Of a DNA stretch of 63,756 bases, positions 20,901 through 49,220 are shown piece after piece. The stretch spans positions 494,293-558,048 of the forward strand of contig NW_018407282.1 in the NCBI RefSeq assembly GCF_002113885.1, written 5' to 3'. The position numbers were made by a program, and so were the translations under genes. Every line of letters begins with the position of its first letter. The first letter of the stretch is position 1. The notes under the pieces are model-generated. The model had not been told where the DNA came from, did not search any database, and saw only the letters and a list, made by a program, of their open reading frames with translations. Source of the stretch: Mizuhopecten yessoensis (taxonomy: Eukaryota).

Positions 20901-23900
20901 CCGGGAATAAGTTACTCCTATCCAAGATACACATTTCTTACTGTCAACCTGGAACTTGTTACACCAATCTTACTGTCAAGCGGGAACTAGTTACTCCTTC
21001 CGTCCTGTCAACCGGGAACGTGATACACCTATCTTACTGTCAACCGGAAACTAGTTAAACGTATCTTACTTTCAACCGGGCACTAGTTACACCTCTCTTA
21101 CTGTCAACCGGGAACTACTTATATCTATCTTACTGTCAACCGGGACCTAATTACGCCTACGGACGGGGACATTCGATACTAAATACACCAACCTTACTGT
21201 CAACCGGGAACTACTTATATCTATCTTACTGTCAACCGGGACCATATTCCGCCTACTCCCGCTGACAACCGATACTAAATACTCCAATCTTACTGTCAAC
21301 CGGGAACTTGTTACGCCTGCTGCCGCGGACAGTCGGTACTAAATACACCAATCTTTTAATGTCATCCGGGAACTTATTACGCCTACGGCCGCTGGCAACC
21401 GATACTAATTTCACCAATCTTACTGTCAACCGTGACCTTATTTCGCCTACTGCCGCTGACAACCGGTACTAATTACACCAATCTTACTGTCGACCGGGAA
21501 ATTATTACGCCTACTGCCACTCACAACCGGTACTAAATACACCAATCTTTTACTGTCAACCGGGAACTAGATACACCTACTGTCCTGTAAACCGGGAACA
21601 ATAAACACCTATTTTACTGTCAACAGGGAACTAGTTACACCTATCTTCCTGTCAACCGGGAACTAGATACACCTACTGTCCTGTAAACCGGGAACAATAA
21701 ACACCTATTTTACTGTCAACAGGGAACTAGTCGAACCTATATTACTGTCAACCGGGAACTAGATACACCTACTGTCCTGTCAACCGGGAACAATAAACAC
21801 CTATTTTACTGTCAACAGGGAACTAGTTACACCTATCTCACTGTTTATCGGGAACTAGCTACACCTATCTTACTGTCAACAGTGAACTAGTCAAACCTAT
21901 CTTACTGTCAACCGGAAACTAGTTAAACGTATCTTACTTTCAACCGGGCACTAGTTACACCTCTCTTACTGTCAACCGGGAACTGATTACGCCTACGGCC
22001 GCTGACAACCGATTCTAATGACACCAAACTTACTGTCAACCTGGAACTTGTTACACCAATCTTACGGTCAAGCGGGAACTAGTTACACCTACCGGCCTTT
22101 CAACCGGGAACGAGATACACATATCTTACTGTCAACCTGGAACTTGTTACACCAATCTTACGGTCAAGCGGGAACTAGTTACACCTACCATACTAATTAC
22201 ACCAATCTTATTGTCAACCGGGAATAAGTTACTCCTATCCAAGATACACATTTCTTACTGTCAACCTGGAACTAGATACACATATCTTACTGTCAACCTG
22301 GAACTTATTACGCCTACTGCCCCTGACAACCGATACTAAATACTCCAATCTTACTGTCAACCGGGACCTAATTACGCCTACTGCCGCTGTCAACCGATAC
22401 TAATTACGCCAATCGTACTGTCAACCGGGAACTTATAACGCCTACTGCCGCTGACAATCGGTACTAAATACACCAATCTTTTAATGTCATCCGGGAACTT
22501 ATTACGCCTACGGCCGCTGGCAACCGATACTAATTTCACCAATCTTACTGTCAACCGGAAACTAGTTAAACGTATCTTACTTTCAACCGGGCACTAGTTA
22601 CACCTCTCTTACTGTCAACCGGGAACTAGCTACACCTATCTTACTGTCAACCGGAAACTAGTTACACCTATCTTACTTTCAACCGGGAACTAGTTACACC
22701 TATATTATTGCCAACCGGGTATAAGTTACACCTCTTACTGTTAACCGGGAACTAGTTACACCTATCTTATTGCCAACCGGGAATAAGTTACACCAATCTT
22801 ACTGTCAAACGGGAACTTATTCCGCCTACTGCCGCTGACACCCGATACTAATTACACCAAACTTACTGTCAACCAGGAATTAATTACACCAATCTAACTG
22901 TCAACCGGGAGTTTATTACGCCGGCTGCCGCTGGCAACCGATACTAATTTCATCAATCTTACTGTATACTAATTACACCAAACTTACTGTCAACCAGACA
23001 ACCGATACTAATTACACCAAACTTACTGTCAACCGGGAATTAATTACACCAATCTAACTGTCAACCGGGAACTTATTACGCCTACTGCCGCTGACAATCG
23101 ATACTAAATACACCAATCTTACTGTCAAACGGGAACTGATTAATCTAGCGAACTCTCGACCGAGAACTTATTACAACCAAAGAATGTCAACCGTATTTCA
23201 CCAACCGTCCTGTAAACAGGTCACTGTTTACAACTACCGTACTGTCAACCGGGAACTAGTTACACCTATCTTATTGCCAACCGGGAATAAGTTACACCTT
23301 TTTTACTGTCAACCGGGAAATTGTTACACATATCTTATTGTCAATCGGGAACTAGTTACACCTACCGTCCTGTCAACCGGGAACGAGATACACATATCTT
23401 ACTGTCAACCTGGAACTAGGTACACATATCTTATTGTCAACCGGGAATAAGTTACTCCTATCTTATTGTCAACCGGGAATAGGTTACACCAATCTTACTG
23501 TCAACCGGGAACTAGTTACACCTACCGTCCTGTCAACCGGGAACGAGATACACATTTCTTACTGTCAACCTGGAACTAGATACACATATCTTACTGTCAA
23601 CCGGGAACTAGTTATATCTATCTTACTGTCAACCGGGAACTAGATACACCTACTGTCCTGTAAACCGGGAACCATAAACACCTATTTTACTGTCAACAGG
23701 GAACTAGTTACACCTATCTTACTGTCAACCGGGAACTAGTAACACCTACCGTCCTGTCAACCGGGAACTAGATACACCTATATTACTGTCAACCTGGAAC
23801 TTCTTACACTAATCTTATTGTCAACCGGGAACTAGTTACACCTATCTTATTGTCAACCGGGAATAAGTTACACCTATCTTACTGTCAACCTGGAACTTGT

Positions 23901-26900
23901 TACACCAATCTTACTGTCAAGCGGGAACTAGTTACACCTACCGTCCTGTCAACCGGGAACGAGATACACCTATCTTACTGTCAACGGGGAACTAGTTAAA
24001 CCTATCTTACTGTCAACCGGAAATTAAATACACCTACTGTCCTGTCAACCGGGAACTAGATACACCTATCTTACTGTCAACAGGGAACTTGATACGCCTA
24101 TCTTACTGTCAACCGGGAACTAGATACACCTACCGTCCTGTCAACCGGGAACTAGTTACACCTATGTTACTGTCAACCGGAAACTAGTTACACCTACCGT
24201 CCTGTCAACCGGGAACTAGTTACACCTATGTTACTGTCAACCGGAAACTAGTTACACCTACCGTCCTGTCAACCGGGAACTAGTTACACCTATCATACTG
24301 TCAACCGGAAACTAGTTACACCTACCGTCCTGTCAACCGGGAACTAGTTACACCTATCCTATTGTCAACCGGGAACTAGTTATACCTACCGCCCTGTCAA
24401 CCGGGAACTAGTTACACCTATCTTACTGTCAACGGTGAAATAGATACACCTACCGTCCTGTCAACCGGGAACTTATTACACCTACTGCTGCTAACAACCG
24501 ATACTAAATAGACCAATCTTACTGTCAACTGGGAACTAATAACTCCAATCTTACTGTCAACCGGGACCATATTCCGCCTACTGCCGCTGACAACCGATAC
24601 TAAATACACCAATCTTACTGTCAACCGGGACCTAATTACGCCTACTGACGCTGACATTCGATACTAAATACACCAATCTTACTGTCAACAGGGAACTTAT
24701 TACGCCTACTGCCGCTGACAACTGATGCTAATTACACCAATCTTACTGTCAACCGGGAACTTGTTACGCCTGCTGCCGCTGACAGTCGGTACTAAATACA
24801 CCAATCTTACTGTCGACCGGGAACTTATTACGCCTACTGTTGCTGACAATCGATACTAATTACACCAATCTTACTGTCAACCGGGAACTTGTTACGCCTG
24901 CTGCCGCTGACAATCGGTACTAAATACACCAATCTTACTGTCAACCGGGAACTTATTACGCCTACTGTTGCTGACAATCGATACTAAATACACAAATCTT
25001 ACTGTCAACCGGGAACTTATTACGCCTACTGCCGCTGACAACCGATACTCATTACACCAAACTTACTGTCAACCGGGAATTAATTACACCAATCTTACCG
25101 TCAACCGGGACCTTATTACGCCTACTGCCGCTGGCAACCGATACTAATATCACCAATCTTACTGTCAACGGGACCTTATTACGCCTACTGTCGCTGACAA
25201 CCGATACTAAATGCACCAATCTTACTGTCAACCGGGAACTTATAACGCCTACTGCCGCTGACGATCGATACTAAATACACAAATTTTACTGTCAACCGGG
25301 AACTTATTACGCCTACTGCCGCTGACAATCGATACTAAATATACCAATCTTACTGTCAACCGGGAACTTATAACGCCTACTGCCGCTGAAAACCGATACT
25401 AAATACACAAATCTTACTGTCAACCGGGAACTTATTACGCCTACTGCCACTGATTAATCCAGCGAACTCACGACCGGGAACTTATTACAACCAAAGAATG
25501 TCAACCGGAAACGTATTTCACCAACCGTCCTGTAAACATGTCACTGTTAACAACTACGTACTGTCAACCGAGGACTAGTTACACCTATCTTATTGCCAAT
25601 CGGGAATAAGTTACACTTATCTTACTGTCAACCTGGAACTTGTTACACATATCTTATTGTCAATCGGGAACTAGTTACACCTACCGTCCTGTCAACCGGG
25701 AACGAGATACACATATCTTACTGTCAACCGGGAACTAGGTACACATATCTTATTGTCAACCGGGAATAAGTTACTCCTATCTTATTGTCAATCGGGAATA
25801 AGTTACACCAATCTTACTGTCAACCGGGAACTAGTTACACCTACCGTCCTGTCAAACGGGAACGAGATACACATTTCTTACTGTCAACCTGGAACTAGAT
25901 ACACCTATCTTACTTTCAACCGGGAACTAGTAACACCAATCTTATTGTCAATCGGGAACTAGTTACACCTATCTTATTGTCAACCGGGAACTAGTAACAC
26001 CTACCGTCCTGTCAACCGGGAACTAGATACACCTATATTACTGTCAACCTGGAACTTCTTACACTAATCTTATTGTCAACCGGGAACTAGTTACACCTAT
26101 CTTATTGTCAACCGTGAATAAGTTACACCTATCTGACTTTCAACCTGGAACTTGTTACACCAATCTTACTGTCAATCGGGAACTAGTTACACCTATCTTA
26201 CTGTCAAGCGGGAACTAGTTACACCTACCGTCCTGTCAACCGGGAACGAGATACACCTATCTTACTGTCAACGGGGAACTAGTTAAACCTATCTTACTGT
26301 CAACCGGGAATTAAATACACCTACTGTCCTGTCAACCGGGAACTAGATACACCTATCTTACTGTCAACAGGGAACTAGATACACCTATCTTACTGTCAAC
26401 CGGGAACTAGATACAACTACCGTCCTGTCAACCGGGAACTAGTTACACCTATCCTATTGTCAACCGGGAACTAGTTATACCTACCGTCCTGTCAACCGGG
26501 AACTAGTTACACCTATCTCACTGTTTATCGGGAACTAGCTACACCTATCTTACTATCAACAGGGAACTAGTCAAACCTATCTTACTGTCAACCGGGAACT
26601 AGTTACACCTACCGTCCTGTCAACCAGGAACTAGTTACACCTATCTTACTGTCAACCGGAAACTAGTTACACCTATCTTACTGTCAAGCGGGAACTAGTT
26701 ACACCTACCGTCCTGTCAACCGGGAACGAGATACACCTATCTTACTGTCAACGGGGAACTAGTTAAACCTATCTTACTGTCAACCGGGAATTAAATACAC
26801 CTACTGTCCTGTCAACCGGGAACTAGATACACCTATCTTACTGTCAACAGGGAACTAGATACACCTATCTTACTGTCAACCGGGAACTAGATACAACTAC

Positions 26901-29560
26901 CGTCCTGTCAACCGGGAACTAGTTACACCTATCCTATTGTCAACCGGGAACTAGTTATACCTACCGTCCTGTCAACCGGGAACTAGTTACACCTATCTCA
27001 CTGTTTATCGGGAACTAGCTACACCTATCTTACTATCAACAGGGAACTAGTCAAACCTATCTTACTGTCAACCGGGAACTAGTTACACCTACCGTCCTGT
27101 CAACCAGGAACTAGTTACACCTATCTTACTGTCAACCGGAAACTAGTTACACCTATCTTACTGTCAAGCGGGAACTAGTTACACCTACCGTCCTGTCAAC
27201 CGGGAACGAGATACACCTATCTTACTGTCAACGGGGAACTAGTTAAACCTATCTTACTGTCAACCGGGAATTAAATACACCTACTGTCCTGTCAACCGGG
27301 AACTAGATACACCTATCTTACTGTCAACAGGGAACTAGATACACCTATCTTACTGTCAACCGGGAACTAGATACAACTACCGTCCTGTCAACCGGGAACT
27401 AGTTACACCTATCCTATTGTCAACCGGGAACTAGTTATACCTACCGTCCTGTCAACCGGGAACTAGTTACACCTATCTCACTGTTTATCGGGAACTAGCT
27501 ACACCTATCTTACTATCAACAGGGAACTAGTCAAACCTATCTTACTGTCAACCGGGAACTAGTTACACCTACCGTCCTGTCAACCAGGAACTAGTTACAC
27601 CTATCTTACTGTCAACCGGAAACTAGTTACACCTATCTTACTGTCAAGCGGGAACTAGTTACACCTACCGTCCTGTCAACCGGGAACGAGATACACCTAT
27701 CTTACTGTCAACGGGGAACTAGTTAAACCTATCTTACTGTCAACCGGGAATTAAATACACCTACTGTCCTGTCAACCGGGAACTAGATACACCTATCTTA
27801 CTGTCAACAGGGAACTAGATACACCTATCTTACTGTCAACCGGGAACTAGATACAACTACCGTCCTGTCAACCGGGAACTAGTTACACCTATCCTATTGT
27901 CAACCGGGAACTAGTTATACCTACCGTCCTGTCAACCGGGAACTAGTTACACCTATCTCACTGTTTATCGGGAACTAGCTACACCTATCTTACTATCAAC
28001 AGGGAACTAGTCAAACCTATCTTACTGTCAACCGGGAACTAGTTACACCTACCGTCCTGTCAACCAGGAACTAGTTACACCTATCTTACTGTCAACCGGA
28101 AACTAGTTACACCTATCTTACTGTCAAGCGGGAACTAGTTACACCTACCGTCCTGTCAACCGGGAACGAGATACACCTATCTTACTGTCAACGGGGAACT
28201 AGTTAAACCTATCTTACTGTCAACCGGGAATTAAATACACCTACTGTCCTGTCAACCGGGAACTAGATACACCTATCTTACTGTCAACAGGGAACTAGAT
28301 ACACCTATCTTACTGTCAACCGGGAACTAGATACAACTACCGTCCTGTCAACCGGGAACTAGTTACACCTATCCTATTGTCAACCGGGAACTAGTTATAC
28401 CTACCGTCCTGTCAACCGGGAACTAGTTACACCTATCTCACTGTTTATCGGGAACTAGCTACACCTATCTTACTATCAACAGGGAACTAGTCAAACCTAT
28501 CTTACTGTCAACCGGGAACTAGTTACACCTACCGTCCTGTCAACCAGGAACTAGTTACACCTATCTTACTGTCAACCGGAAACTAGTTACACCTATCTTA
28601 CTGTCAAGCGGGAACTAGTTACACCTACCGTCCTGTCAACCGGGAACGAGATACACCTATCTTACTGTCAACGGGGAACTAGTTAAACCTATCTTACTGT
28701 CAACCGGGAATTAAATACACCTACTGTCCTGTCAACCGGGAACTAGATACACCTATCTTACTGTCAACAGGGAACTAGATACACCTATCTTACTGTCAAC
28801 CGGGAACTAGATACAACTACCGTCCTGTCAACCGGGAACTAGTTACACCTATCCTATTGTCAACCGGGAACTAGTTACACCTACCGTCCTGTCAACCGGG
28901 AACTAGTTACACCTATCTTACTGTCAACGGGGAACTAGTTAAACCTATCTTACTGTCAACCGGGAATTAAATACACCTACTGTCCTGTCAACCGGGAACT
29001 AGATACACTTATCTTACTGTCAACAGGGAACTATATACACCTAACTTACTGTCAACCGGGAACTAGTTACACTTATCTTACTGTCAAAAGGGAACTAGTT
29101 ATACCTACCGTCCTGTCAACCGGAAACTAGTTACACCTATCTCACTGTCAACCGGGAACTAGCTACACCTATCTCACTGTCAACAGGAAACTAGTCAAAC
29201 TTATCTTACTGTCAACCGGGAACTAGTTACACCTACCGTCCTGTCAACCGGGAACTAGTTACGCCTCCCGTCCTGTCAACCGGAAACTAGTTACACCTCC
29301 CGTCCTGTCAACCGGAAACTAGTTACACCTATCTAACTCTCAACCGGGAACTAGCTACACCTATCTTACTGTCAACCGGGAACCAGTTACACTTATCTTT
29401 CTGTCAAAAGGGAACTAGTTATCCCTACCGTCCTGTCAACCGGGAACAAGTTACACCTATCTTACTGTCAACCGGGAAGCAGTGATTACATCTTTAGTAC
29501 TCTCAATGGGGACATCATTACAGCTATGATACTGTCACCCGGGACCTTATTACAGCAACA
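17985..29560. repeat. ~11.5-kb satellite array, 32-bp monomer (CTGTCAACCGGGAACTAGTTACACCTATCTTA) with 64-bp dimer domains
   Basis: Monomer variant at ~18.0-18.8 kb; 64-bp (33+31) dimer at ~18.8-20.7 kb and ~24.46-25.45 kb; patchwork at 20.7-23.1 kb; ACTAGT-containing monomer at 23.2-24.46 kb and 25.56-29.5 kb; both edges decay gradually. Confidence 0.98.
26181..28877. repeat. 480-bp (15 x 32) higher-order repeat, ~5.6 apparently identical copies
   Basis: Sequence lines starting 26221, 26701, 27181, 27661, 28141 and 28621 are identical, as are the lines between; first difference seen at 28878. Confidence 0.95.
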
Positions 29561-29970: not shown

Positions 29971-31112
29971 GGTGACATTTCGTTCAGGAGTCTCGTATTT
30001 ATTTTGGTACCTGGTATTTTTTTTCCATATCTGGGAGGCTTTTGCAATTTATTTGACCAATAATGCTTTAATTCCAAAGATGCTCACTTGTGTTTTCATG
30101 ACAGAATTTCTTCCATACTAAAGCAGGTAGCGATGTATGTTTATAATTATTACATAAAACACAGATATTCATAGCAACGATCTCTTTAATAGACAATTCA
30201 TGGATCACGCGCTTTTGAATTAACAAGTCATTTAGAAAGTGGAAGAAACAAATACCGTTAAATTTGTTTGTCAGTGGTTTTAATCAAGAACTTAATATCC
30301 ACACGTGTTCGCTATTAAACCAGAATTTCAGTAATATGCACGGCCCTCAAACATGCTGCAAATACGTTTGGGTCACTCCTACTGCATATTATGTAACAGA
30401 ACCTCCCGCAAAATGACGAAAGATGCCAACTTGTACACCGGAGGTGTAACTTTGTGATTCATAGAAACACTTGTGCTGCTCCTTTACAGAAGCCGTTGCA
30501 TAATGCCATGAAAATCGAACAGATGCATGGACCACACCCATATTACGTCATTGGTGGGTTTTTTTTTTATTACGTCACCGGCATGCGTTAGTGATTTAAC
30601 GGACGATCCCTTTCCATTCGAAATATAATTCATTATTTATTTCGTTAAATACATTAAAATACTTTAATTTTAGTTTATTGTTATCATAATTCTCAACAAT
30701 AACAAAAAATTATGATTCCAGAGCGAATGTTGTCCGTTTTTGTCCTTCCTAACATAATTTTTCTTGTAAAAAAACATGAAGGTAATATCGGTATTCGAAC
30801 TGCAACTTCTATTTTTAGTTTTTAACTCGAGACGGACACCAACAGATTTCATTTCAAACTGTCACTCGACATAGCGCCCTATACGATTTGCAAAATTAGT
30901 TTTGGGCGATTTACAGTTCATTTATAAATATAATTTCAACCGGTTGACGGTAGGAGTTAGGATGTAATTATTTTCTCTTTGGTATGATATACGCCAATAG
31001 GTGGCGCTATTGGTGGTATTTGCACGAACAAATGGCTGGGTTGTTACCTATAGGTGTCATTCAAGCGACACATGTTACAAGAAGCACACGTGTATTTTTG
31101 AGGTTTTTGAAG

Positions 31113-31293
31113 AAAACCCAATTTTCATGATGTAATACTTACCATAACTTTAGCATGCATATACAATACCTACACCCATCTTTGTAGCCCAAAAACAAAA
31201 GATTGAAATATCCTTACCTCCCTTCCGTGACGTAACCCAAAATTCGACGACAGACCCACGGAGTGATCTCCTTTCTTCAAACCCCTTTTATGG
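31113..31293. repeat. DIRS 3' inverted terminal repeat
   Basis: atgcatatacaatacctacacccatctttgtagcccaaaaacaaaagatt...gacgacagacccacggagtgatctcc...ccttttatgg is the reverse complement of 32821-32999, with about 10 mismatches in the inner ~120 bp and more divergent outer ~45 bp. Confidence 0.93.
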
Positions 31294-31309
31294 AGCCTAA
31301 AGGCAGCCG

Positions 31310-31560
31310 GGATGAAAAGAACCTGATCATCTGAGTGGTCGTAACCGTACTTGATGACCTGACAGATCCATCTAGACACTGACTGAGAGGAGATATCCTG
31401 CTGACCCTGCTAAATGGGCAACCGGAGACAAGAGGGGTGAGAAGACAAGACATGAATCTCACTACTCCTTCGACCTGAGGCCAGGTCAATAACGAATACC
31501 ACCTTGTAGGTAACAAACTTCAAGGAGGCAGACGCTAAAGGCTCATAAGGTGCGCCCGCA
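31310..31560 (-). pseudogene. Tyrosine recombinase fragments of the DIRS element
   Basis: One frame reads APYEPLASASLKFVTYKVVFVIDLASGRRSSEIHVLSSHPSCLRLPI*QGQQDISSQSVSRWICQVIKYGYD, resembling the DIRS YR motifs PFEPL...LTxKTxFLLALASARRxSEIHALS and ISxxTISRWI...AY. The intervening LCPVRAL region and the C-terminal HxxR and catalytic Tyr are missing; one in-frame TAG at 31410-31412. Confidence 0.88.
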
Positions 31561-31644
31561 TCAGCGATTCGAGCAGAGGTCACTCTGTCCTGGATGTCGG
31601 CCTGCTCTGTCTCGGCAATCCAACCCTCAGGTAAGTCAGATACC

Positions 31645-32435
31645 CTATATAGACAAACCGTCAACAGAACTGCTTACACGTCTCCGCGAGGGAAAGACCA
31701 AACCCCAAGGATTCCACGAAGGAAAAGCCATGGGGTTAAACCCATATCCCGGAGGATAAGGGAAAGATCCCGCGGGCTGGGAGTGACCCCAGAACCTCCC
31801 CCCCCCCCCCCCAAGGTTCCCGGAAGAATGAAATTCCGGACCGGACCTAATAGGACCGGGTCCGGGTAACTGACCGGGAGAGTAAGCCTGACAAGCATTG
31901 GTGCCGGGATTAGTAAGTTGCGCGTCACTAATCCCGGTAGACACAGACAATCCCGAAAGAAAGTCTGTAGTCACACCAGGACCTGAACCCGAAAGAACAG
32001 GCCCGGCACCAAGACTGTCCCCAACGACAGTACCACCTGGAATGCCGGGATCACTGACAGAGTCCCTACCCGAAGGCAAGCGCGAACGCTTACGGGCGTT
32101 CCCGGCCAATTCCCCGCCCCTACTCCGGGGAGTTCCTGGACAGAAAGGGCCACCCCAGAGACAGTACCACCAGACCCCAGAGAGCTGGTGGCACGACCCC
32201 TACCTCTCTGTTTCCCTCGCTTACCGGAAGAAGCAGAAGAATCTCTCTTACGGCAAGTTAAGGGTAGCTTTGGAACAATGAAGTCCTTGTCCTGAGATTT
32301 AGTCTGTGAACAAAGTTCACAAGGCGAAACCTCACTGCAAGGACGACACTGGGGACAAGCATCATGAGGGTCCCGTTTCACGAAGAAATGGGAACACCCA
32401 TGAGCTGTCCCCCGTCGCTGTCCTGACCGAGACAT
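31645..32435 (-). pseudogene. DIRS ORF1 (gag-like) N-terminal part, frameshifted and truncated
   Basis: ATG at 32435 opens MSRSGQRRGTAHGCSHFFVKRDPHDACPQCRPCSEVSPCELC (C-x7-DPH-x2-C-x2-C-x2-C-x5-C-x2-C zinc-finger-like motif typical of DIRS ORF1), then Ser/Gly/Pro-rich sequence that continues in the 31645-32109 frame. Confidence 0.75.
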
Positions 32436-32820
32436 AACCTCCAAAGCGAAAGTAAACAAAGTTTACAAGCAGACAAACACGGGAAAATGATAATAAAATA
32501 CGATAGTACAAATTACGCAACGTAATATTCACCCCTGATATAAATCCGAAAACGGTTAAAATAAATAACGTTTGCTAAAACAAACAACCGTCACTGAAAT
32601 AAACAGATGTCGGAAATTAACACACAATAATGGCGGACCGCGTGGCACACCACCGGCACACGTGGAGTAAAATAACCGGCCGAAAAAGGCACAAAAATAA
32701 TTTTCAACAATAAACAATTGTATTAACAAGGGCAGATGGGTATAAGGCACACAAACTGCGCAATAAATTGAGTTGACACTTTAACAAAACCGGCAAAACA
32801 AAGTCAGCAGGCGGCAGGTG

Positions 32821-32999
32821 CCATAAAAGGAAGAGGAAGGGAGATCACTCCGTGGCTCTGTCGTCGAGATATGGGTTACGTCACGGTAGGGAGGTAGGGT
32901 TATTTGAATCTTTTGTTTTTGGGCTACAAAGATTGGTGTAGGTATTGTATATGCATACTTAAGTAATGGTAATTATTACTGAAATGAAATTAATTTTTT
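32821..32999. repeat. DIRS 5' inverted terminal repeat
   Basis: ccataaaagg...ggagatcactccgtggctctgtcgtcg...tttttgggctacaaagattggtgtaggtattgtatatgcat pairs with 31113-31293. Confidence 0.93.
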
Positions 33000-35900
33000 A
33001 AGGGGGTTTATTATATTGAGATAGATAGATTAGGAGTTATATGTTTGTGTGTGAGATGTACATTATTGTGTAATTGCGTTATTAATCCTGGTGATTGTAA
33101 ATAAACATCGGTCTGTGTCTATGTCGCAGGGAAATACAGTTTCTGTGTTCGTGTTGTTTATCCTATTGGATAATATAGAAGAGAATAAGTGTTCTACAGT
33201 TACGGAAGCAAGTTAGTTCATACTAAATAATCAGCATGCACGTCGGTGATCTCGTGTGAGTATAGGGTGACGTGGAATTTAAACAAGTCAGTGCTATAAT
33301 GTATACGTACAAAAGGTGCGTTTTGACGTCCTTCTTGTGTAAGTTATTTTCCCTGACTGATAGCAAATGGAAAACTTTTCCTCAAATTAGTTGCTAAGTT
33401 TACAAAACACCGGATCCATTGCCACAGTACGAGATTTTAATAAGGGTGACATGCTCCTGGAGATATTGAATTGCCGTTTCATTTGATGCCTTGTATGTGT
33501 ATGTGTACATCAAAATTTTGTTTTTCTGCCTGTATCGTACAAGTTACCAATGCAATGAATATATTATTGGTTTGGTGTCTTCTCTGTTTTAAATACGGGT
33601 CGCCAGACGTGTAAATAGAGCATAAACGAAAGGTTGTATTGAACTTTTCTGCCAAATAAAAAAACTCCAGTTAAACGTTTATAGAGGTTCGAATATGCAG
33701 GTTCGATTTTATGCAGACCGTGTTCATTATACAAAATAAAGCGTTACCCCCTTAAGCAATCGAAAGAACAGACAGACAATTTTGACAACAAACAAACAAA
33801 CCAACAGGTTAGCGTATAAACATACATAAACAAAGTGTGTCTTCCTGTGTTTACCCTTGTATAATGGTTTTCCCCCACCAGGTGATTCTGAAACACAGTC
33901 TCGGTCGTTTAAACCCTGCCAGTATTTCTTTTTCAGTTTTTCAAATATTCTTTCGTACAGTCGAATGGATTAATCTAACGAGACCTCTGTAAAGTCAAAA
34001 TAACTACACGCAGAACAGAAAATCCTAATCTGAAAAATCAAAAAAATAAATCGGAAAAGCTGAGTTAAATAAAAAGTCTTATCAAGCCGACAAACATTTT
34101 GAAACTTGACCCTGTGTCTGGGTCACCTGACCTCCAATAATAATCACTTATGCTAACACTGTCCAAATATGATGGATTAGGTGTCAAATAATGTTTATCA
34201 CATCATAAACGGGAAAACACGGCGACCTGAAGAAAGAGTTAGACGAATGTTCAAAGACGTGTAATTATATAATGGCGGGTAGATCGGTCACGAATTTAAT
34301 TATGGCGTCGAAGTTATATAAAGGCGTAGGTCGACAGCTAGACAGATAGGGTGGTCTTAATCGCGGACCGACACAACATCAATTTCAGTCAACATTCATC
34401 AAATCAGTCGCGCCAACAAAAACATACCGCTTTGCTTTTTTACACGACTTAAGATTGTTATTCTTGTTTCGGTTAAAGAAATAGACCGACACAGCCTGTA
34501 TTGCAATTCCAACCTACCTACAGTAACGTATACATTATATATTTTCTGTATAAGTAAATCGTCCAGAATTTTCCAATTCAAACGAAGATAGTTCTTTGTA
34601 GTTCTGTAACGTCATCGAAAAAAGTGATCTCAGCAAATGCACCGACCCACATGCCTTCGTACCGGAAGTGCAAATAGCGATATCAAAACACGAGTATGGT
34701 AATCTCGTTTTTGCAACATCTTGATCGGAAGTCAATACGATTTATCCAGGAGTCATGCGCTTTGGTAACAATTGCCGGCTGTGAATGATTTCTGTATCTG
34801 TATGCAAATCATGCGCTCCAGTGACCACAATCGCAGAACGGAAGTCCAAATGGTTATCGAATATACGCTTGAAGAATTACTTAACTTCAAACGTTTCACT
34901 GGTTACGATATGAGCATACAACAAAACTGCAATATCGTTCGTGCTTTTGTCGGTCGAACTCTTGAAAATACAATTTCCTGGCGATGTAACGAATCAAACT
35001 GACACAGATAAGCACGATTTTGACATTACATAACTCATTCTTTGCATACGTCGATAATATTTTGATCATATCGTCATATTGTACCTGTTCACATGGCCAC
35101 AATCCCCTGGAGGAGCGACATTCCATCATTTCTAATCTTTCCAATCAGAACCGCTATCCATCTTTACCAGTTTTCCCAAACAAACTTTAACATTAAAAGC
35201 TAAATAATTATGCCGTATCGGTAGGTTCTGAGATTACCCGCTGATTCCTTTGCCCGTGCAATTATGACGTGAAACGTTTAAAGTCTTTAATCAAAAACCG
35301 AGCATGCAACATTCTTTTCAAATATTTATTTTTTCATTCACTCTTTTAAACTCGGTGTTAAAGTTCACGACACCCCGTGAAAGGTTATTAGCCAATTCGA
35401 TTTTATCTGAAGACATTTTGGTCGCAAATCATGTATAGTCACAGGTGTAAGATCTACACCGTCTCATAAACGTTGGGGGAATGATCTACAGGCTCGTAAA
35501 GCATTTAGACACAATCACAAGGAACATACCGAACACATAAAAATACTGCTTTCAAATATACAAAACGTGAAAACGGTAAGGTGGAAACACGAAGAAAAAA
35601 TTAAAGAAGTACAAGTCACTTGTTTTGCGATTTATGACGATCTTAAATCATGGTTATTTATGCCAGTTAATATATTATGTTTGATCCAGTTTTGCCATTA
35701 ATGTACTCGAAGGGCAAAAAGGTTTAAAAAGCGCAGTGAAAGTATATTTTGCTTTTAACCACAGAGTGAAATGAAAAGTGTTCTTTTTGTCCGAGGTGTT
35801 TGGTGATTGTGTTGTGGACAAGTTACCATGTCATCTATATCTTGATTATGATTATTTATGCGCAGGAATGGATATAATTTGATTTACACAATCCCGTTAA

Positions 35901-38121: not shown

Positions 38122-41100
38122 GAGGGGGTGCTAGAGATACTACGGTAGAATGTGCCTCAAGCTTGTCCACTACCAGTACACATCTACATGAAACAGGGGG
38201 TGTTAGAGATACTAAGGTAGTACGTGTCCTCAGACCTATCCACTACCAGTACACATCTACATGAAACAGGGGGTGTAAAAGATACTACGGTAGAACGTGC
38301 CTCAAGCCTGTCCGCTACCAGTACACATCTACATGAAACAGGGGGTGTTACAGATACTACGGTAGTACGTATCCTCAGACCTATCCACTACCAGTACACA
38401 TCTACATGAAACATGGGGTGTTAGAGATACTACGGTAGTACGTGTCCTCAGACCTGTCCACTACTTGTACACATCTACATGAAACAGGGGGTGCTAGAGA
38501 TACTACGGTAGTACGTGTCCTCAGACCTATCCACTACCAGTACACATCTACATGACAGAGGGGGTGTTAGAGCTCCTCCGGTAGTACGTGTCCTCAGACC
38601 TGTTCACTACCAGTACACATCTACATGACAGAGGGGGTGTTAGAGATAATACGGTAGTACGTGTCCTCAAACCTATCCACTACCAGTACACATCTCCATG
38701 AAACAGGGAGTGTTAGAGATACTACGGTAGTACGTGTCCTCAGACCTATCCACTACCAGCTCACATCTACATGAAACAGGGAGTGTTAGAGATACTACGG
38801 TAGTACGTGTCCTCAGACCTATCCACTACCAGAACACTTCTACATGAAACAGGGGGTGTTAGAGATAATACGGTAGTACGTGTCCTCAAACCTATCCACT
38901 ACCAGTACACATCTCCATGAAACAGGGGGTGTTAGAGATACTACGGTAGTACGTGTCCTCAGAACTACCCACTACCAGTACATATCTTCATTAAATAGGG
39001 GGTGTTAGAGATACTACGGTAGTATGTGTCCTCAGACCTATCCACTACCAGTACACATCTACGTGAAACAGGGGGTATTAGAGATACTACGGTAGTACGT
39101 GTCCTCAGACCTGTCCACTACCAGTTCATATCTTCATTTAGTAGGGGTGTTAGAGATACTACGGTAGTATATGTCATCAGACCTATCCACGACCAGGACA
39201 CATCTACATGAAACAGGGGGTGTTAGAGATACTACGGTAGTACGTGTCCTCAGACCTACCCACTACCAGTACATATCTTCATTAAATAGGGGGTGTTAGA
39301 GATACTACGGTAGTATATGTCATCAGACCTATCCACTACCAGTACACATCTACATGAAACAGGGGGTGTTAGAGATACTACGGTAGTACGTGTCCTCAGA
39401 CATATCCACTACGTGTACACATCTACATGAAACAGGGGGTATTAGAGATACAACGGTAGTACGTGTCCTCAGACCTGTCCACTACCAGCACACATCTACA
39501 TGAAACAGAGGGTGTTAGAGATACTACGGTAGTACGTGTCTTCAGACATATCCACTACGTGTACACATCTACATGAAACAGGGGGTGATAGAGATACTAA
39601 GGTAGGACGTGTCCTCAGACATATCCACTACATGTTCACATCTACATGAAACAGGGGATGTTAGAGATACTATGGTAGTACGTGTCCTCAGACATATCCA
39701 CTACGTGTACACATCTACATGAAACAGGGGGTGTTAGAGATACTACGGTAGGACGTGTCCTCAGACCTGTCCACTACCAGAACACATCTACATGAAACAG
39801 GGGGTGATAGAGATACTACGGTAGTACGTGTCCTCAGACATATCCACTACCAGGACACATCTACATAAAACAGGGGGTATTAGAGATACTATGGTAGTAC
39901 GTGTCCTCAGACCTATCCACTACCAGAACACATCTACATGAAACAGGGGGCGATAGAGATACTACGGTAGTACGCGTCCTCAGACCTACCCACTACTATT
40001 AGAGATACTACGGTAGTACGGGTCCTCAGACCTACCCACTACCAGTACACATCTACATAAAACAGTGAGTGTTAGAGATACTACGGTAGGATGGGTTCTC
40101 AGACCTGTCCACTACCAGTTCACATCTACATGAAACAGGGGGTATTAGGGATACGATGGTAGTACGTGCCCTCAGACATATCCATTACGGGTTCACATCT
40201 ACATGAAACAGGGAGTGTTAGAGATACTACGGTAGTACCTGTCCTCAGACCTATCCACTACCAGTTCACATCTACATGAAACAGGGGATGTTAGAGATAC
40301 TACGGTAGTACCTGTCCTCAGACCTATCCACTACCAGATCACATCTACATGAAACAGGGGGTGTGAGAGATACTACGGTAGTACGCATCCTCAGACCTCC
40401 CTACTACCAGTACACATCTACATGACAGAGGGGGTGTTCGAGATAATACAGTAGTACGTGGCCTAGGACACATCTACATGAAACAGGGGGCGATAGAGAT
40501 ACTACGGTAGTACGCGTCCTCAGACCTACCCACTACCAGTACACATCTACATAAAACAGGGAGTGTTAGAGATACTACGGTAGGATGGGTTCTCAGACCT
40601 GTCCACTACCAGTTCACATCTACCACTACCAGTACACATCTACATAAAACAGTGAGTGTTAGAGATACTACGGTAGGATGTGTTTTCAGACCTGTCCACT
40701 ACCAGAACATCAACATGACAGAGGGGGTGTTAGAGATACTACGGAAGGACGTGTCCTCAGACCTGTCCACTACCAGTTCACATCAACATGAAACAAGGGT
40801 TGTTAGAGAGGATGTGTTCTCAGACCTGTCCATTACCAGAACACATCTACATTAAACAGGGGGTGTTAGAGAAACTACGGTAGTACGTGTCCTCAGCCCT
40901 ATCCACTACCAGAACACATCTACATGAAACAGGGGGTATTAGGGATACTATGGTAGTACGTGTCCTCAGACTACATAAAACAGGGGGTATTAGAGATACT
41001 ACGGTAGTACGGGTCCTCAGACCTACCCACTACCAGTACACATCTACATGAGACAGGGGGTGTTAGAGGTACTACGGTAGTACGTGTCCTCATACCTGTC

Positions 41101-44100
41101 CACTACCAGAACACATCTACATGAAACAGGGGGTATTAGGGATACGATGGTAGTACGTGCCCTCAGACATATCCATTACGGGTTCACATCTACATGAAAC
41201 AGGGGATGTTAGAGATACTATAGTAGAAAGTGTCCTCAGACATATCCACTACGTGGACACATTCCGCTATCAGTACACATCTACATGAAACAGGGGATGT
41301 TAGAGATACTATAGTAGAAAGTGTCCTCAGACATATCCACTACATGTTCACATCTACATGAAACAGGGGGGGTTAGAAACACTACGGGAGTACGTGTCTT
41401 CAGACCAATCCACTACCAGTACACATCTAGCTAGAGATACTACGGTAGAATGTGCCTCAAGCTTGTCCACTACCAGTACACATCTACATAAAACAGTGAG
41501 TGTTAGAGATACTACGGTAGGATGTGTTCTCAGACCTTTCCACTACCAGAACACATCTCAATGAAACAGGGGTGTTAGAGATACTACGGTATTACGCGTC
41601 CTCAGACCTACCCACTACTATTAGAGATACTACGGTAGTACGCGTCCTCAGACATATCCACTACCAGGACACATCTCCATAAAACAGGGGGTATTAGAGA
41701 TACAACGGTAGTACGTGTCCTCAGACCTGTCCACTCCCAGTACACATCTACATGACAGAGGGGGTGTTCGAGATAATACAGTAGTACGTGTCCTAGGACC
41801 CATCTACATGAAACAGGGGGTGTTATAGATACTACGGTAGTACGTGTCCCTACGGTAGTACGTGTCCTCAGACCTATCCACTACCAGTACGCATCTACAT
41901 GAAACAGGGGGTGTTAGAGATACTACGGTAGTACGCATCCTCAGACCTACCTACTACCAGTACACATCTACATGAAACAGCGGGTGATAGAGATACTATG
42001 GTAGTACGTGTCCTCAGACATATCCACTACGTGTACACATATACATGAAACAGGGGGTATTAGAGATACTATGGTAGTACGTGTCCTCAGACATATCCAT
42101 TACGTGTACACATCTACATGAAACAGGGGGTGTTAGAGATACTACGGTAGTACGTGTCCTCAGACCTATCCACTACCAGGACACATCTACATGAAACAGG
42201 GGGTGTTAGAGATACTACGGTAGGATGAGTTCTCAGACCTACCCACTACCAGTACACATCTACATGAAACAGCGGGTGATAGAGATACTACGGTAGTACG
42301 TGTCTTCAGACCAATCCACTACCAGTACACATCTACATGAAACAGGGGGTGTTAGAGATACTACGGTAGGATGTGTTCTCAGACCTACCCACTACCAGTA
42401 CACATCTACATGAAACAGCGGATGATAGAGATACTACGGTAGTACGTGTCCGAATGGGTATTAGGGATACTACGGTATTGCGTGTCCTCAGACCTGTCCA
42501 CTACCAGTTCACATCTACAAGAAACAGGGGGTTAAAGAAATTCTACGGTAGTTCGTGTCCTCAGACCTGTGTAATACCCTACACATCTACATTATACAGT
42601 GGGTGTAAGGGATACTACGGTAGTACATGTATTAAATAGGGGGTGTTATAGATACTACGGTAGTACGGGTCCTCAGACCTATCCATTACCCTACACATCT
42701 ACATTATACAGCCGGTGTTAGAGATAGGATACTACGGTAGTACATGTCGCCCGACCTGTCTAATACAAATACCCTACATATCTACATTATATAGTGGGTG
42801 TTAGAGAAATACTGTAGTACGTGTCCTCAGACATATCCACTACGTGTACGCATCTACATGAAACAGGGGTATTAGAGGTACTACGGTAATATGTGTCCTC
42901 AGACCTGTGTTATACCCTAAACATCTAATCCGAACTTTGAAAATTCCATCGTCAGCATCGGGAAAATCAGCTATGAGCAGTTAGTTAGAGTTTACGCGGT
43001 GCCTTTCAATAGAATATCGCCGTGTAAACCTCTAACACTGTTGAAGTAACATTATACCAGTGTTAGAAATTACGGTAGTACGTGTCCCCAGACCTGTCCA
43101 ATACCCTGAAACATCTACATTAAACAGGGGGTATTAGACGTAATACGGTAGTACGTGTCCCAGACCTGTCGAATACCCTACATATCTACCTTATTCAGTG
43201 GGTGTTAGGGATACCACGGTAGTACGTGTCCTAAGACCTATCCACCACCAGTAAATATCTACATGAAACAGGGGTTGTCAGAATGACTACGATAGTACGT
43301 GTCCTCAGACATATCCACTACGTGTACGCATCTACATGAAACAGGTATGAGGACACGTACTACCATAGTATCTCTAACACCCTCTGTTTCATGTAGATGT
43401 TTACTGGAAGTGGATAGGTATGAGGACACGTACAACCGTAGGATCTCTAACACCACTTGGTTAATGTAGATGTGTACTGCTAGTGGATAGGTCTGATGAC
43501 ATATACTACCGTAGTTTCATGTAGATGTGTACTGGTAGCGGACAGGCTTGAGGAACGTTCTACCGTAGTATCTCTATCATCCGCTGTTTCATGTAGATTT
43601 GTACTGGTAGTGGGTAGTTCTGAGGAGGTAGTGGACAGGTCTGAGGACACATCCTACCGTAGTTTCTCTAACATCCCCTGTTTCATGTGGATGTGTTCTG
43701 GTAGATTAGACAGGTCTGAGGTCACGTACTACCTGTTTCATGTAGATGCGTCCTGGTAGTGGATAGGTGTGAGGACACGTACTACCATAGTATCTCTATC
43801 ACCCGCTGTTTCATGTAGATTTGTACTGGTAGTGGGTAGGTTTGAGAACACATCCTACCGTACACCCTTTGTTTCATGTAGATGTCTACTGGTAGTGGAT
43901 AGGCCTGAGGACACGTACTTCCGTAGTATCTCTATCATCCGCTGTTTCATGTAGATGTTTACTGGTAGTGGATAGGGCTGAGGACACGGACTACCGCAGT
44001 ATCCCTAATACCCATTCGGACACGTACTACCGTAGTATCTATAACACCCCCTATTTAATGTAAGGTCTGTTATCCCTAACTCCCCGTGTTTAGTGTAAAT

Positions 44101-47100: not shown

Positions 47101-49220
47101 TGTGTCCTCAGACCTGTGTAATACCCTACACATCTACATTAAACACGGGGTGTTAGGGATATTACAGTAATACATGTCCTCAGACCTGTCCAATACCCTA
47201 CACATCTACAAGAAACACGGGGTGTTCGGGATACTACGGTACTGCGTGTCCTCAGACCTGTCGAACACCCTACACATGTTCATTTATATTAAATACGGGG
47301 TGTAAGGGATACTACGGTAGTACGTGTCCGAAGACCTGTCCAATACCCTACATTTCTACATTAAACAGTGTTAGGGATACTACGGTAATACCTGTCCTCA
47401 GACCTGTCCAATACCCTACACATCTACATTATACAGTGGGTGTTAGAGATACTACGGTAGTACGTGTTCCCAGACATGTCCAATACCCTACATATCTACA
47501 TTAAACCGGGGGTGTTAAGGATACTACGGTAATACATGTCTCCAGACCTGTCTAAAACCCTGAAACATCTACATTATACAGTGGGTGTTAGGGATACTAC
47601 GGTAGTTCGTGTCTCCAGACCTGTCTAATACCCTGAAACATCTACATTATACAGTGGATGTTAGGGATACTACGGTAGTACATGTCGCCAGACCTGTCTA
47701 ATACCCTGAAACATCTACATTATACAGCCGGTGTTAGAGATACTACGGTAGTTCGTGTCCTCAGACCTGTCTAATACCCAGAAACATCTACATTATACAG
47801 TGGGTGTAAGGGATACTACGGTAGTACATGTCCCCATACCTGTCGAATACCCTACATATCTACATTATATAGTGGGTGTTAGAGATATTACGGTAGTACG
47901 TGTCCTCAGACCTGTCCAATACCCTGAAACATCTACATCATACAGTGGGCGTTAGGGATACTACGGTAGTACATGTCCCCGTACCTGTCGAATTCCCTGA
48001 AACATCTACATTACACAGTTGGTGTTAGAGATACTACGGTAGTACATGTCCTCAGACCTGTCCAGTACCCTACATATCTACATTATATAGGGAGTGTTAG
48101 GTATACTACGGAAGTACGTGTCCCCAGACCTGTCCAATACCCTACATATCTACATTATACAGTGGGTGTTAGGGATACCACGGTAGTACGTGTCCTCAGA
48201 CCTGTCTAATACCCTGAAACATCTACATTATACAGGGGGTGTTAGAGATACTACGGTAGTACGTGTCCCCAGACCTGTCCAATACCCTGAAACATCTACA
48301 TTATACAGTGGGTGTTAGAGATACTACGGTAGTACGTGTCCCAGACCTGTCGAATACCCTACATATCTACATTATACAGTGGGTGTTAGGGATACTACGG
48401 TAGTACATGTCACCAGACCTGTCTAATACCCTGTAACATCTACATTATACAGTGGGTGTTAGGAATACTACGGTAGTACATGTCCCCATACCTGTCGAAT
48501 ACCCTACATATCTACATTATATAGTGGGTGTTAGGGATATTACGGTAGTACGTGTCCTCAGACCTGTCTAAAACCCTGAAACATCTACATTATACAGTGG
48601 GTGTTAGAGATACTACGGTAGTACGTGTCCTCAGACCTGTCTAATACCCTGAAACATCTACATTATACAGTGGGTGTTAGAGATACTACGGTATGACGTG
48701 TCCCCAGAACCTGTCCACTATCCTACATATCTCCATTATACAGTGGGTTTTAGGGAAACTACGGTAGTGCATGTCCTCAGACCTGTCTAATACCCTGAAA
48801 CTTCTACATTATACAATGGGTGTTAGAGATACTACGGTAGTACATATTCAATGGGTGTTAGGGATATTACGAGAGTACGTGTCCTCAGACCTGTCTAATA
48901 CCCTGAAATATCTACATTATACAGGGTGTGTTAGAGATACTACCGTAGTACATGTCCCCAGACCTGTCCAATACTACATATCTACATTATACAGTGGGTG
49001 TTAGGGATACCACGGTAGTACGTGTCCTCAGACCTGTCTAATACCCTGAAACATCTACATTATACAGGGGGTGTTAGAGATACTACGGTAGTACGTGTCC
49101 AAGACCTGTCCAATATCCTACATATCTACATCATACAGTGGGTTTTAGGGTAACTACGGTAGTACGTGTCCCCAGACCTGCCCATTACCCTGAATTATCT
49201 ATATTAAATAGAGGGTGCTC
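38122..49220. repeat. ~11-kb satellite array, 73-bp monomer (GTAGTACGTGTCCTCAGACCTATCCACTACCAGTACACATCTACATGAAACAGGGGGTGTTAGAGATACTACG)
   Basis: Subtype A (cactaccagtacacatctacatgaaac) dominates 38.1-42.4 kb and subtype B (aataccctgaaacatctacattatac) dominates 46.2-49.2 kb. The mixed zone has reverse-oriented blocks at ~43345-44133 and ~44949-45234. Confidence 0.98.

What the first reader, a model, noticed from the sequence alone, without database searches (positions are those of the whole stretch)
31110..33002. Miniature DIRS derivative with intact ends, gag zinc finger and fused recombinase fragments, but no RT or ICR
Seen: both ITRs complete, AAG on both flanks (CTT on the element strand), ORF1 N-terminus retained, at least three separate internal deletions, and no sequence complementary to the two termini upstream of the 3' ITR. 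Known: autonomous DIRS elements are several kb long, encode RT/RNase H and YR, and use an internal complementary region (ICR) to rebuild their ends before integrating at a short core without ordinary TSDs. Inference: a decayed single copy, or a non-autonomous family moving without an ICR, which would need a different mechanism such as YR-mediated DNA excision. This is the best candidate for something undescribed.
Basis: partly seen in the sequence, partly recalled or inferred. Interest (0 to 1): 0.7.

Follow-up and report, generated by a model that had tools for sequence, protein, structure and literature searches.

The report
Dead, internally deleted scallop DIRS copy
This is a single, old, internally deleted and immobile copy of an abundant tyrosine-recombinase (DIRS1-like) retrotransposon of a scallop genome. 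No evidence was found that it, or any other shortened copy tested, has multiplied, so it is ordinary genomic debris.

Summary
A 1.9-kb minus-strand element has both terminal inverted repeats, the start of ORF1 with a conserved Cys/His motif, and two fused recombinase fragments. It has no reverse transcriptase and no internal complementary region (ICR).

Two points fail. The true ends are 31098 and 32989, not 31110 and 33002. The "AAG on both flanks" is not a target-site mark: the left AAG lies inside the element's conserved 3' extension, and the right AAG is flank.

Full-length relatives in the same genome are 6.2-7.2 kb and carry an RT ORF, a recombinase ORF and a 92-nt ICR. Against them the window copy lacks five segments. 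Two gaps (246 and 210 bp) also occur in other long copies. Three are private (879, 2,790 and 541 bp), and the 541-bp one removes the ICR.

Genome searches across each private junction find only this locus. Five other shortened copies, three without and two with an ICR, are also unique. The inverted repeats (87.7% complementary, against 95-96% in young copies) and a frameshifted ORF1 indicate an old copy.

Verdict: a solitary dead derivative. Breakpoints recur among independent copies, which hints that such deletions often arise during reverse transcription. Low interest.

The parts
31098..32989 (-). Whole element with corrected ends (1,892 bp). It is an internally deleted DIRS1-like copy. The 5' end is at 32989 (TTTCATTTCAG...) and the 3' end at 31098 (...CTTCAAAAACCTCAA).
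   Evidence: Ends are defined by where homology to 22-38 other copies stops.
31098..31152 (-). The 3'-terminal 55 nt: a right extension of about 24 nt plus the divergent part of the 3' repeat. In full copies this segment is complementary to the right half of the ICR.
   Evidence: It matches the reverse complement of L039_el 6255-6309 at 96%. It is conserved in all 22 genomic 3' ends.
31132..31293 (-). 3' inverted terminal repeat arm.
   Evidence: 87.7% complementary to 32821-32979.
31316..31318 (-). Junction of the private 541-bp deletion that removed the ICR (L039_el 5803 joined to 6344). It carries a 3-nt filler, TTT on the element strand.
   Evidence: The junction is unique in the genome.
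31319..31421 (-). Segment E: a fragment of the C-terminal part of the recombinase ORF (L039_el 5701-5803).
   Evidence: 96% identical to L039. It lies in the 577-aa ORF whose homologues carry core-binding and Phage_integrase domains.
31415..31575 (-). Segment D: a recombinase ORF fragment (L039_el 5333-5491). It encodes ...LASGRRSSEI..., which I read from general knowledge as the Arg-containing box I motif of tyrosine recombinases; no tool tested this. The D/E joint (210 bp missing against L039) is also contiguous in C4988 and C107, so it is a lineage variant.
31573..31663 (-). Segment C: a 91-nt piece from upstream of the RT domain (L039_el 2453-2543). It is bounded by the private 2,790-bp deletion that removed RT/RNase H (joint near 31574, 3-nt microhomology) and by the private 879-bp deletion (joint near 31661, 4-nt microhomology TGAC).
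   Evidence: Both joints are unique in the genome. The 31661 joint is bridged by contigs of three runs from three studies.
31660..31795 (-). Segment B: the distal ORF1 region (L039_el 1439-1574). Its downstream end on the element strand (window about 31660) sits at a breakpoint shared within 4 nt by three other independently deleted copies.
31796..31813 (-). Homopolymer run (G on the element strand) at the B/5'-part joint. The 246 bp missing against L039 are also missing in the full-length copy C3106, so this is a lineage variant and not a private deletion.
31808..32820 (-). The 5' part: 5' untranslated region (32436-32820) and ORF1 from ATG 32435. ORF1 is frameshifted against L044: the 162-aa frame ends at 31971 and the protein continues in another frame (31645-32109). 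This part is only 81-91% identical to any other copy.
32310..32402 (-). Conserved Cys/His-rich motif at the ORF1 N-terminus, a putative zinc-binding site.
   Evidence: Conserved across about 30 copies. No Pfam match.
31904..31937 (-). Strong 13-bp-stem hairpin inside ORF1. In five other copies a deletion breakpoint falls in this hairpin.
   Evidence: Folding gives -20.4 kcal/mol with z -5.1, and -24.2 kcal/mol with z -6.5 in L039.
32821..32989 (-). 5' inverted terminal repeat. The outermost 37 nt (32953-32989) are complementary to the left half of the ICR in full copies.
32990..33002 (.). Flanking DNA, not element. It contains the right 'AAG'.
   Evidence: The 5' flanks of about 38 copies are unrelated in sequence but A-rich at -9 to -5 and A/T at -1.

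Best explanation
The feature is one solitary, defective copy of a DIRS1-like tyrosine-recombinase retrotransposon. The family has hundreds of places in this scallop genome. Full-length members are 6.2-7.2 kb and carry ORF1, RT/RNase H, a recombinase, inverted terminal repeats, a right extension, and a 92-nt ICR (37 nt complementary to the 5' end plus 55 nt complementary to the 3' end).

The window copy keeps both complete ends, the 5' UTR and a frameshifted ORF1. It also keeps four short internal pieces. It has lost RT/RNase H, most of the recombinase and the ICR through three private deletions of 879, 2,790 and 541 bp. It cannot make its own proteins. By analogy with Dictyostelium DIRS-1, where the ICR is essential, it also cannot rebuild its ends from a transcript, so it is immobile.

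Shown: the structure, the loss of the ICR, the uniqueness of the junctions, and the age indicators.

Inferred: how the deletions arose. I lean slightly (about 50:40) towards template switching during reverse transcription, which would give a dead-on-arrival insert, over deletion after insertion. For the ICR-removing deletion specifically, the complete ends imply the ICR was still present when the ends were restored. That deletion therefore happened late: in second-strand synthesis or after integration.
For: Family identity:
- RVT_1 in L039, E 2.8e-14.
- The 577-aa ORF has 88 homologues, named core-binding-domain proteins, some with Phage_integrase or SAM-like domains.
- The ICR abuts both terminal complements in full copies.
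- The right extension is conserved.

Map of pieces and gaps.

No cryptic ICR.

Single copy: only the window locus spans any of the three private junctions.

The deletion is real DNA: the 31661 joint is bridged by contigs of three runs from three studies. In two of them (X4 and X10) the depth is close to that of nearby unique sequence; in X1 it is about three times the flank. The 5' end/flank joint is bridged in X3.

Age:
- The ITR arms are 87.7% complementary, against 94.6-95.8% in L038 and L044.
- The 5' part is at most 91% identical to any other copy, while many main-subfamily copies give identical scores.
- ORF1 is frameshifted.

Replicative origin hinted:
- The upstream (ORF1-side) breakpoint at L039_el 1573-1577 is shared by four independent loci with four different downstream partner sites.
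- A second cluster at 1074-1084 falls in a strong hairpin in five loci.
- Three ICR-less copies break at the 3' edge of the ICR, 6300-6313.
- The joints carry 3-4-nt microhomologies or a 3-nt filler.

ICR requirement: shown experimentally for DIRS-1 (PMC7192593).
Against: - The genome search scores only 40 of 300-860 candidate places per query, and the assembly is fragmented (82,659 contigs), so a second copy in unassembled repeat DNA cannot be excluded.
- The joint that removes the ICR (31316-31318) was not among the contig pieces listed by read laying, so it rests on the assembly alone.
- One X1 contig crosses the 31661 joint with 5 differences at about three times the flank depth. This could be an allele or a related copy absent from the reference.
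- Recurrent breakpoints could partly reflect indel boundaries between subfamilies, because all coordinates are relative to one copy (L039), or fragile DNA sites rather than RT pausing.
- The ICR requirement was shown in an amoeba element, not in a mollusc one.
Confidence: 0.85

Rival explanations
1. This is a non-autonomous miniature DIRS family that transposes without an ICR. One route would be the family's recombinase, supplied in trans, excising and reinserting it as double-stranded DNA in the manner of a Crypton.
For: - Both termini are complete, and many young, probably active full-length copies could supply recombinase.
- A conservative cut-and-paste would leave copy number at one, so uniqueness alone does not exclude it.
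- One X4 contig shows an unexplained junction-like joint, 32999 back to 31119, that is absent from the reference.
Against: - No second locus shares any private junction.
- Three other ICR-less short copies are also unique.
- The AAG...AAG core argument fails once the ends are corrected.
- The 3' flank (AAA) lacks the RTT seen at 17 of 22 other 3' ends.
- The copy is old and diverged.
- The X4 joint does not match a precise head-to-tail joint of this copy.
- An ICR-deleted DIRS-1 does not retrotranspose (PMC7192593).
Confidence: 0.03
2. A full-length element inserted here and was whittled down afterwards by ordinary genomic deletions (in-situ decay). This is a sub-variant of the main explanation that differs only in when the deletions happened.
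For: - The copy is old, which gives time for deletions.
- The complete ends imply an ICR was present when the ends were made.
- The filler and microhomology at the joints fit end-joining or replication slippage.
Against: - The upstream end of the 879-bp deletion coincides within 4 nt with breakpoints in three other loci, and its downstream end (2453) coincides with a breakpoint in C5510. Random decay does not predict this.
- About 65% of the element is gone while both ends and the adjoining flanks are intact.
Confidence: 0.4
3. This is an assembly artefact: a short-read assembler collapsed a full-length repeat copy into a chimeric short one.
For: The assembly is fragmented and the family is highly repeated. 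The pieces differ in their identity to other copies, from 84% to 96%.
Against: - Contigs from three independent studies bridge the 31661 joint, and one X3 contig crosses the 31574 joint with 30 and 28 nt on the two sides.
- The same uneven identity (5' part low, coding pieces high) is seen between other real copies.
Confidence: 0.03

Closest known systems
DIRS1-like retrotransposons of molluscs (LgDIRS1-3 of Lottia, AcaDIRS1-2 of Aplysia; Piednoel et al. 2011, PMC3266345)
   Same: The family here has the same architecture: inverted terminal repeats with a divergent outer part and a conserved inner part, a right extension at the 3' end, two adjoining ICR halves just upstream of the 3' repeat, T-rich termini, and RT plus a tyrosine recombinase (paper read).
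   Different: The window copy has lost the RT, most of the YR and the ICR. In this family the ICR halves are 37 + 55 nt and the extension about 24 nt, against 46-49 nt in the Lottia and Aplysia elements. The 3-bp core could not be fixed: 3' flanks read RTT, while the ICR junction reads AA|TTT.
Dictyostelium DIRS-1 and its engineered ICR-deleted derivative (Malicki et al. 2020, PMC7192593)
   Same: The window copy is a natural counterpart of the ICR-deleted construct. That construct is transcribed and reverse-transcribed but does not complete retrotransposition. The lack of any amplified ICR-less copy here agrees with that result.
   Different: The host and family are different. The window copy also lacks RT and intact YR, and nothing was tested experimentally here. 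Shortened copies that keep the ICR are single-copy too, so the genome gives no ICR-specific contrast.
Internally deleted, non-autonomous derivatives of LTR retrotransposons (LARD/TRIM-type elements; from general knowledge)
   Same: The ends are kept and the coding interior is lost.
   Different: LARD/TRIM elements are defined as families with many copies sharing one internal structure. Here every deleted form is unique.
Crypton DNA transposons (YR-only elements; from general knowledge)
   Different: Cryptons encode an intact YR and have no RT ancestry in the same unit. This copy has only two YR fragments, and there is no evidence that it moved.

Membership tests
DIRS1-like (DIRS order) retrotransposon family | Encodes reverse transcriptase/RNase H | tested here: met
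   Met for the family: RVT_1, E 2.8e-14, in the 745-aa ORF of full-length copy L039. The window copy itself has lost it through the 2,790-bp deletion.
DIRS1-like (DIRS order) retrotransposon family | Encodes a tyrosine recombinase instead of a DDE integrase | tested here: met
   The 577-aa ORF of L039 has homologues named core-binding-domain proteins. Some carry Phage_int_SAM (best 1.7e-5) and Phage_integrase (2.6e-4) hits, all just below Pfam's curated cut-offs. The window copy keeps only two fragments (31319-31575).
DIRS1-like (DIRS order) retrotransposon family | Inverted terminal repeats rather than direct LTRs or split direct repeats | tested here: met
   Arms of 162-166 nt at 86-88% complementarity in the window copy, and 86-96% in eight other copies.
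DIRS1-like (DIRS order) retrotransposon family | ICR upstream of the 3' repeat, complementary to both outer termini | tested here: met
   Met in full copies: reverse complement of the 5' 37 nt abutting the reverse complement of the 3' 55 nt, about 35 nt before the 3' repeat. In the window copy it is absent, so this copy is a defective member by descent.
DIRS1-like (DIRS order) retrotransposon family | Insertion at a short core without target-site duplication | tested here: inconclusive
   No duplication is seen. The 5' flanks are A-rich at -9 to -5 and A/T at -1, and the 3' flanks start RTT in 17 of 22 copies. The exact crossover trinucleotide could not be fixed, and the window copy's 3' flank (AAA) is atypical.
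DIRS1-like (DIRS order) retrotransposon family | Methyltransferase-like domain downstream of RT/RNase H | not tested
   No Pfam hit was seen in the ORFs scanned, and no dedicated profile was available.
   Only the window locus spans the three private junctions. The other short copies tested are unique as well. Caveat: 40 candidates were scored per search.
   The AAG pair comes from misplaced ends.

The most novel reading that the evidence does not exclude
Shortened DIRS copies in this genome may be made by the element's own replication. Reverse transcriptase would stall at fixed sites (a 13-bp hairpin in ORF1, a site just before a C-run, and the 3' edge of the ICR) and jump. The resulting ICR-less but end-complete inserts would record that the ICR acts before or at end restoration and is dispensable afterwards. 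This would be natural evidence on the order of steps in DIRS replication. The bolder reading, that the mini-element is moved as DNA by the recombinase without an ICR, is not excluded by copy number alone, but it has no positive support (about 3%).
Probability: 0.3. Interest if true: 0.45.

Novelty: new member of a known kind. Interest (0 to 1): 0.15.

Why it matters
As it stands it matters little. It is a dead copy of a known kind of retrotransposon, in a repeat-rich stretch between two satellite arrays.

Its modest value is as annotation. It fixes the true termini, right extension, ICR and target preference of an abundant and apparently young DIRS1-like family in a scallop. It also shows that none of six deletion derivatives tested, with or without an ICR, has multiplied. 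That agrees with the experimental finding that the ICR is essential in Dictyostelium DIRS-1.

The clustering of deletion breakpoints at a hairpin, before a C-run and at the ICR edge could be developed into a small study of template switching in DIRS replication.

Tried and rejected
1. Cryptic ICR. I scanned the interior for complementarity to the 37-nt and 55-nt termini. The best was 13-14 of 20, the same as a shuffled interior.
2. A 15-nt inverted match (31101-31115 with 31272-31286). It is a purine-rich tract next to the repeat that full copies with a real ICR also have, and it pairs with nothing at the 5' end. Rejected as an ICR substitute.
3. Splicing as the source of the recurrent breakpoint at L039_el 1573-1577. 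No GT...AG or CT...AC fits at any register allowed by the microhomology. Rejected.
4. Tandem or direct repeats in L039 as the cause of recurrent breakpoints. None were found.
5. A contrast between ICR-plus and ICR-minus derivatives. Both kinds are single-copy, so there is no natural experiment.
6. The X4 'goes back' joint as a circle of this element. Its middle 20 nt match neither this copy's ends nor the canonical ICR, and a rebuilt 45-nt pattern is absent from the reference. Left unexplained.
8. Earlier findings of the scan: none near this place or by words.
Full report
**What is there.** The region holds a long inverted repeat: 166 nt at 86% complementarity, at 31113-31278 and 32833-32998. 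Between the arms are minus-strand ORF fragments. A search of the window's own genome (987.6 Mb, 82,659 contigs) with the 1,893 bases found at least 863 candidate places, of which 40 were scored. Apart from the window locus itself, they match in separate pieces. No other locus matches end to end.

**The family.** Full-length copies are 6.2-7.2 kb: L044 (contig C3106), L039 (C76599) and L038 (C5510).
- L039 has a 745-aa ORF with an RVT_1 domain, E 2.8e-14.
- An overlapping 577-aa ORF has 88 database relatives. These are mostly unnamed proteins of about 970 aa from bivalves, and some are named core-binding-domain proteins. The closest are from Argopecten irradians (76%) and an invertebrate metagenome (79%).
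- Some relatives give Phage_int_SAM and Phage_integrase hits just below Pfam's curated cut-offs.
- About 35 nt upstream of the 3' repeat, every full copy carries a 92-nt ICR. It is the reverse complement of the element's first 37 nt, directly followed by the reverse complement of its last 55 nt.

This is the DIRS1-like architecture described for molluscs and other eukaryotes, including the right extension of the 3' end (PMC3266345). DIRS elements are reported in bivalves at survey level (PMC10294476). The host is a pectinid scallop. The assembly statistics match my recollection of Mizuhopecten yessoensis, which no tool verified.

**Corrected ends.** I aligned the outer ends of many copies together with their flanks.
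- At the 3' end, 22 genomic copies share the sequence through ...CTTCAAAAACCTCAA and then diverge.
- The element is therefore 31098-32989.
The right AAG (33000-33002) is flank.
- The flank resembles the extension because the family prefers A-rich targets: A at -9 to -5 and A/T at -1.
- Most 3' flanks start RTT. The window's 3' flank is AAA.
- I could not fix the exact crossover core.

**Map of the copy on the element strand, relative to L039**.

| Window coordinates | Content | Notes |
|---|---|---|
| 32989-31808 | 5' repeat, 5' UTR and ORF1 | L039_el 15-1193 |
| (gap) | 246 bp missing | joint at a G-run |
| 31795-31660 | piece B | L039_el 1439-1574 |
| (gap) | 879 bp missing | 4-nt microhomology |
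| 31663-31573 | piece C | L039_el 2453-2543 |
| (gap) | 2,790 bp missing | all of RT/RNase H; 3-nt microhomology |
| 31575-31415 | piece D | recombinase ORF |
| (gap) | 210 bp missing | |
| 31421-31319 | piece E | recombinase ORF |
| (gap) | 541 bp missing | includes the ICR; 3-nt filler |
| 31315-31098 | 3' region | |

The 246-bp gap is shared with the full-length copy C3106. The 210-bp gap is shared with C4988 and C107. Those two are lineage variants, not private deletions. The other three are private.

There is no cryptic ICR. The best complementarity of the interior to either terminus is 13-14 of 20, as in a shuffled interior, while the same test finds 20 of 20 at the ICR of L039.

The ORF1 start and its Cys/His cluster are intact and conserved across about 30 copies. 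ORF1 is frameshifted further on. It has no Pfam match, so 'gag zinc finger' remains an inference.

**Is the deleted form mobile?**
- Searches with the whole interior, and with short stretches across each junction, return only the window locus as a contiguous match. Other copies match on only one side of the ICR-removing joint, and only piece C lying between the other two private joints.
- Three other short copies without an ICR are equally unique at their junctions: C2708 (1.7 kb), C5080 (1.4 kb) and C4373 (2.3 kb).
- Two short copies that keep the ICR, C2617 and C2202, are also unique.
- These searches score only 40 candidates each, so the counts are lower bounds. A copy sharing several junctions should still rank first.
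- The result agrees with the experiment in which an ICR-deleted DIRS-1 was reverse-transcribed but failed to retrotranspose (PMC7192593).

**Is it real and how old?**
- Contigs from three sequencing runs of three different studies bridge the 31661 joint. In X4 and X10 their depth is close to that of nearby unique sequence. In X1 the bridging contig is about three times the depth of the flank and carries five differences.
- One X3 contig crosses the 31574 joint with 30 and 28 nt on the two sides.
- One X3 contig bridges the 5' end and its flank.
- The ICR-removing joint was not among the pieces listed.
- The repeat arms are 87.7% complementary, against 94.6-95.8% in L038 and L044.
- The 5' part is at most 91% identical to any other copy, whereas many main-subfamily copies give identical scores and look young.
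- The copy is therefore old.

**How the deletions arose (inference).** I catalogued gaps of all held copies against L039.
- Breakpoints cluster at L039_el 1573-1577 in four independent loci: the window, C2533, C5536 and C2617. Each joins to a different downstream partner site: 2453, 2413, 5292 and 4933.
- A second cluster lies at 1074-1084 in five loci. It falls inside a 13-bp-stem hairpin (z -6.5 in L039, -5.1 in the window copy).
- A third cluster lies at 6300-6313, the 3' edge of the ICR, in the three other ICR-less copies.
- L039 has no internal direct or tandem repeats that could produce these as alignment artefacts.
- No splice-site pattern fits.
- Fixed stall points with variable landing points are what template switching by reverse transcriptase would give.
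- Subfamily indel boundaries or fragile DNA could also contribute.
- Because the window copy's ends are complete, the ICR must have been present when they were restored. Its loss was therefore late, in second-strand synthesis or after insertion.

**Surroundings.** The copy lies between a satellite with a 32-nt unit (18028-29478) and one with a 73-nt unit (38123-48953). There is no other ORF of 110 aa or more within 29.4-38.2 kb, and no other DIRS copy in the window.

**Unexplained.** One X4 contig joins 32999 back to 31119 with ten other letters between. It resembles an ICR or junction variant, but it matches neither the canonical ICR nor a precise head-to-tail joint of this copy. A rebuilt 45-nt pattern is absent from the reference.

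**Verdict.** The description is largely right. The ends and the flank signature are wrong. This is a dead, solitary deletion derivative of a DIRS1-like element, a new member of a known kind, of low interest.

Noticed in passing
window 18028-29478 and 38123-48953: Two large satellite arrays flank the DIRS copy. One has a 32-nt unit with 64/96/128-nt higher-order periods, spans about 11.4 kb and has strong GC skew. The other has a 73-nt unit and spans about 10.8 kb, with inverted blocks around 43.3-45.2 kb.
   Followed up: no
L039 (C76599), L020 (C2533), L031 (C5536), L037 (C2617), L029, L032, L034, L035; window 31660 and 31904-31937: Deletion breakpoints of independent DIRS copies cluster at three sites. 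L039_el 1573-1577 lies just before a C-run. L039_el 1074-1084 lies in a 13-bp-stem hairpin. L039_el 6300-6313 is the 3' edge of the ICR. Downstream partner sites 2453 and 5682-5685 also recur.
   Followed up: partly
5' and 3' flanks of about 22-38 family copies (loci L002-L058): Target-site preference of the family. The 5' flank is A-rich at -9 to -5 and A/T at -1, resembling the element's own 3' end. The 3' flank starts RTT in 17 of 22 copies. The ICR junction reads ...CCTCAA|TTTCAT..., one base short of the genomic 3' joints.
   Followed up: partly
many contigs, e.g. C1616, C1206, C656, C1767, C5510: A main subfamily of full-length copies gives identical scores to the query, so the copies are near-identical to each other. 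This suggests recent or ongoing activity of the family. Many of these copies carry a second copy of a roughly 55-nt stretch about 243 nt away in the ORF1 region, which L039 and the window copy lack.
   Followed up: no
window 32999 joined to 31119 (run X4): A single contig at unique-like depth joins the 5' end region to the 3' terminal region with 10 other letters between. It is a junction- or ICR-like variant that is not found in the reference.
   Followed up: partly
window 31602-31773 (run X1): A 173-nt contig crosses the 31661 deletion joint with 5 differences, at about three times the depth of the unique flank. It may be a divergent allele or a related copy missing from the reference.
   Followed up: no
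window 31272-31298 and 32816-32840: Purine-rich tracts lie directly inside each inverted repeat, for example AAAAGGAAGAGGAAGGGAG on the + strand at the 5' repeat. They are reminiscent of the polypurine tracts that prime plus-strand synthesis in LTR elements, and they are conserved in L039.
   Followed up: no
L031 (C5536) 2168-2214: One deletion joint in another copy is filled by a (CA)n microsatellite of about 40 nt.
   Followed up: no
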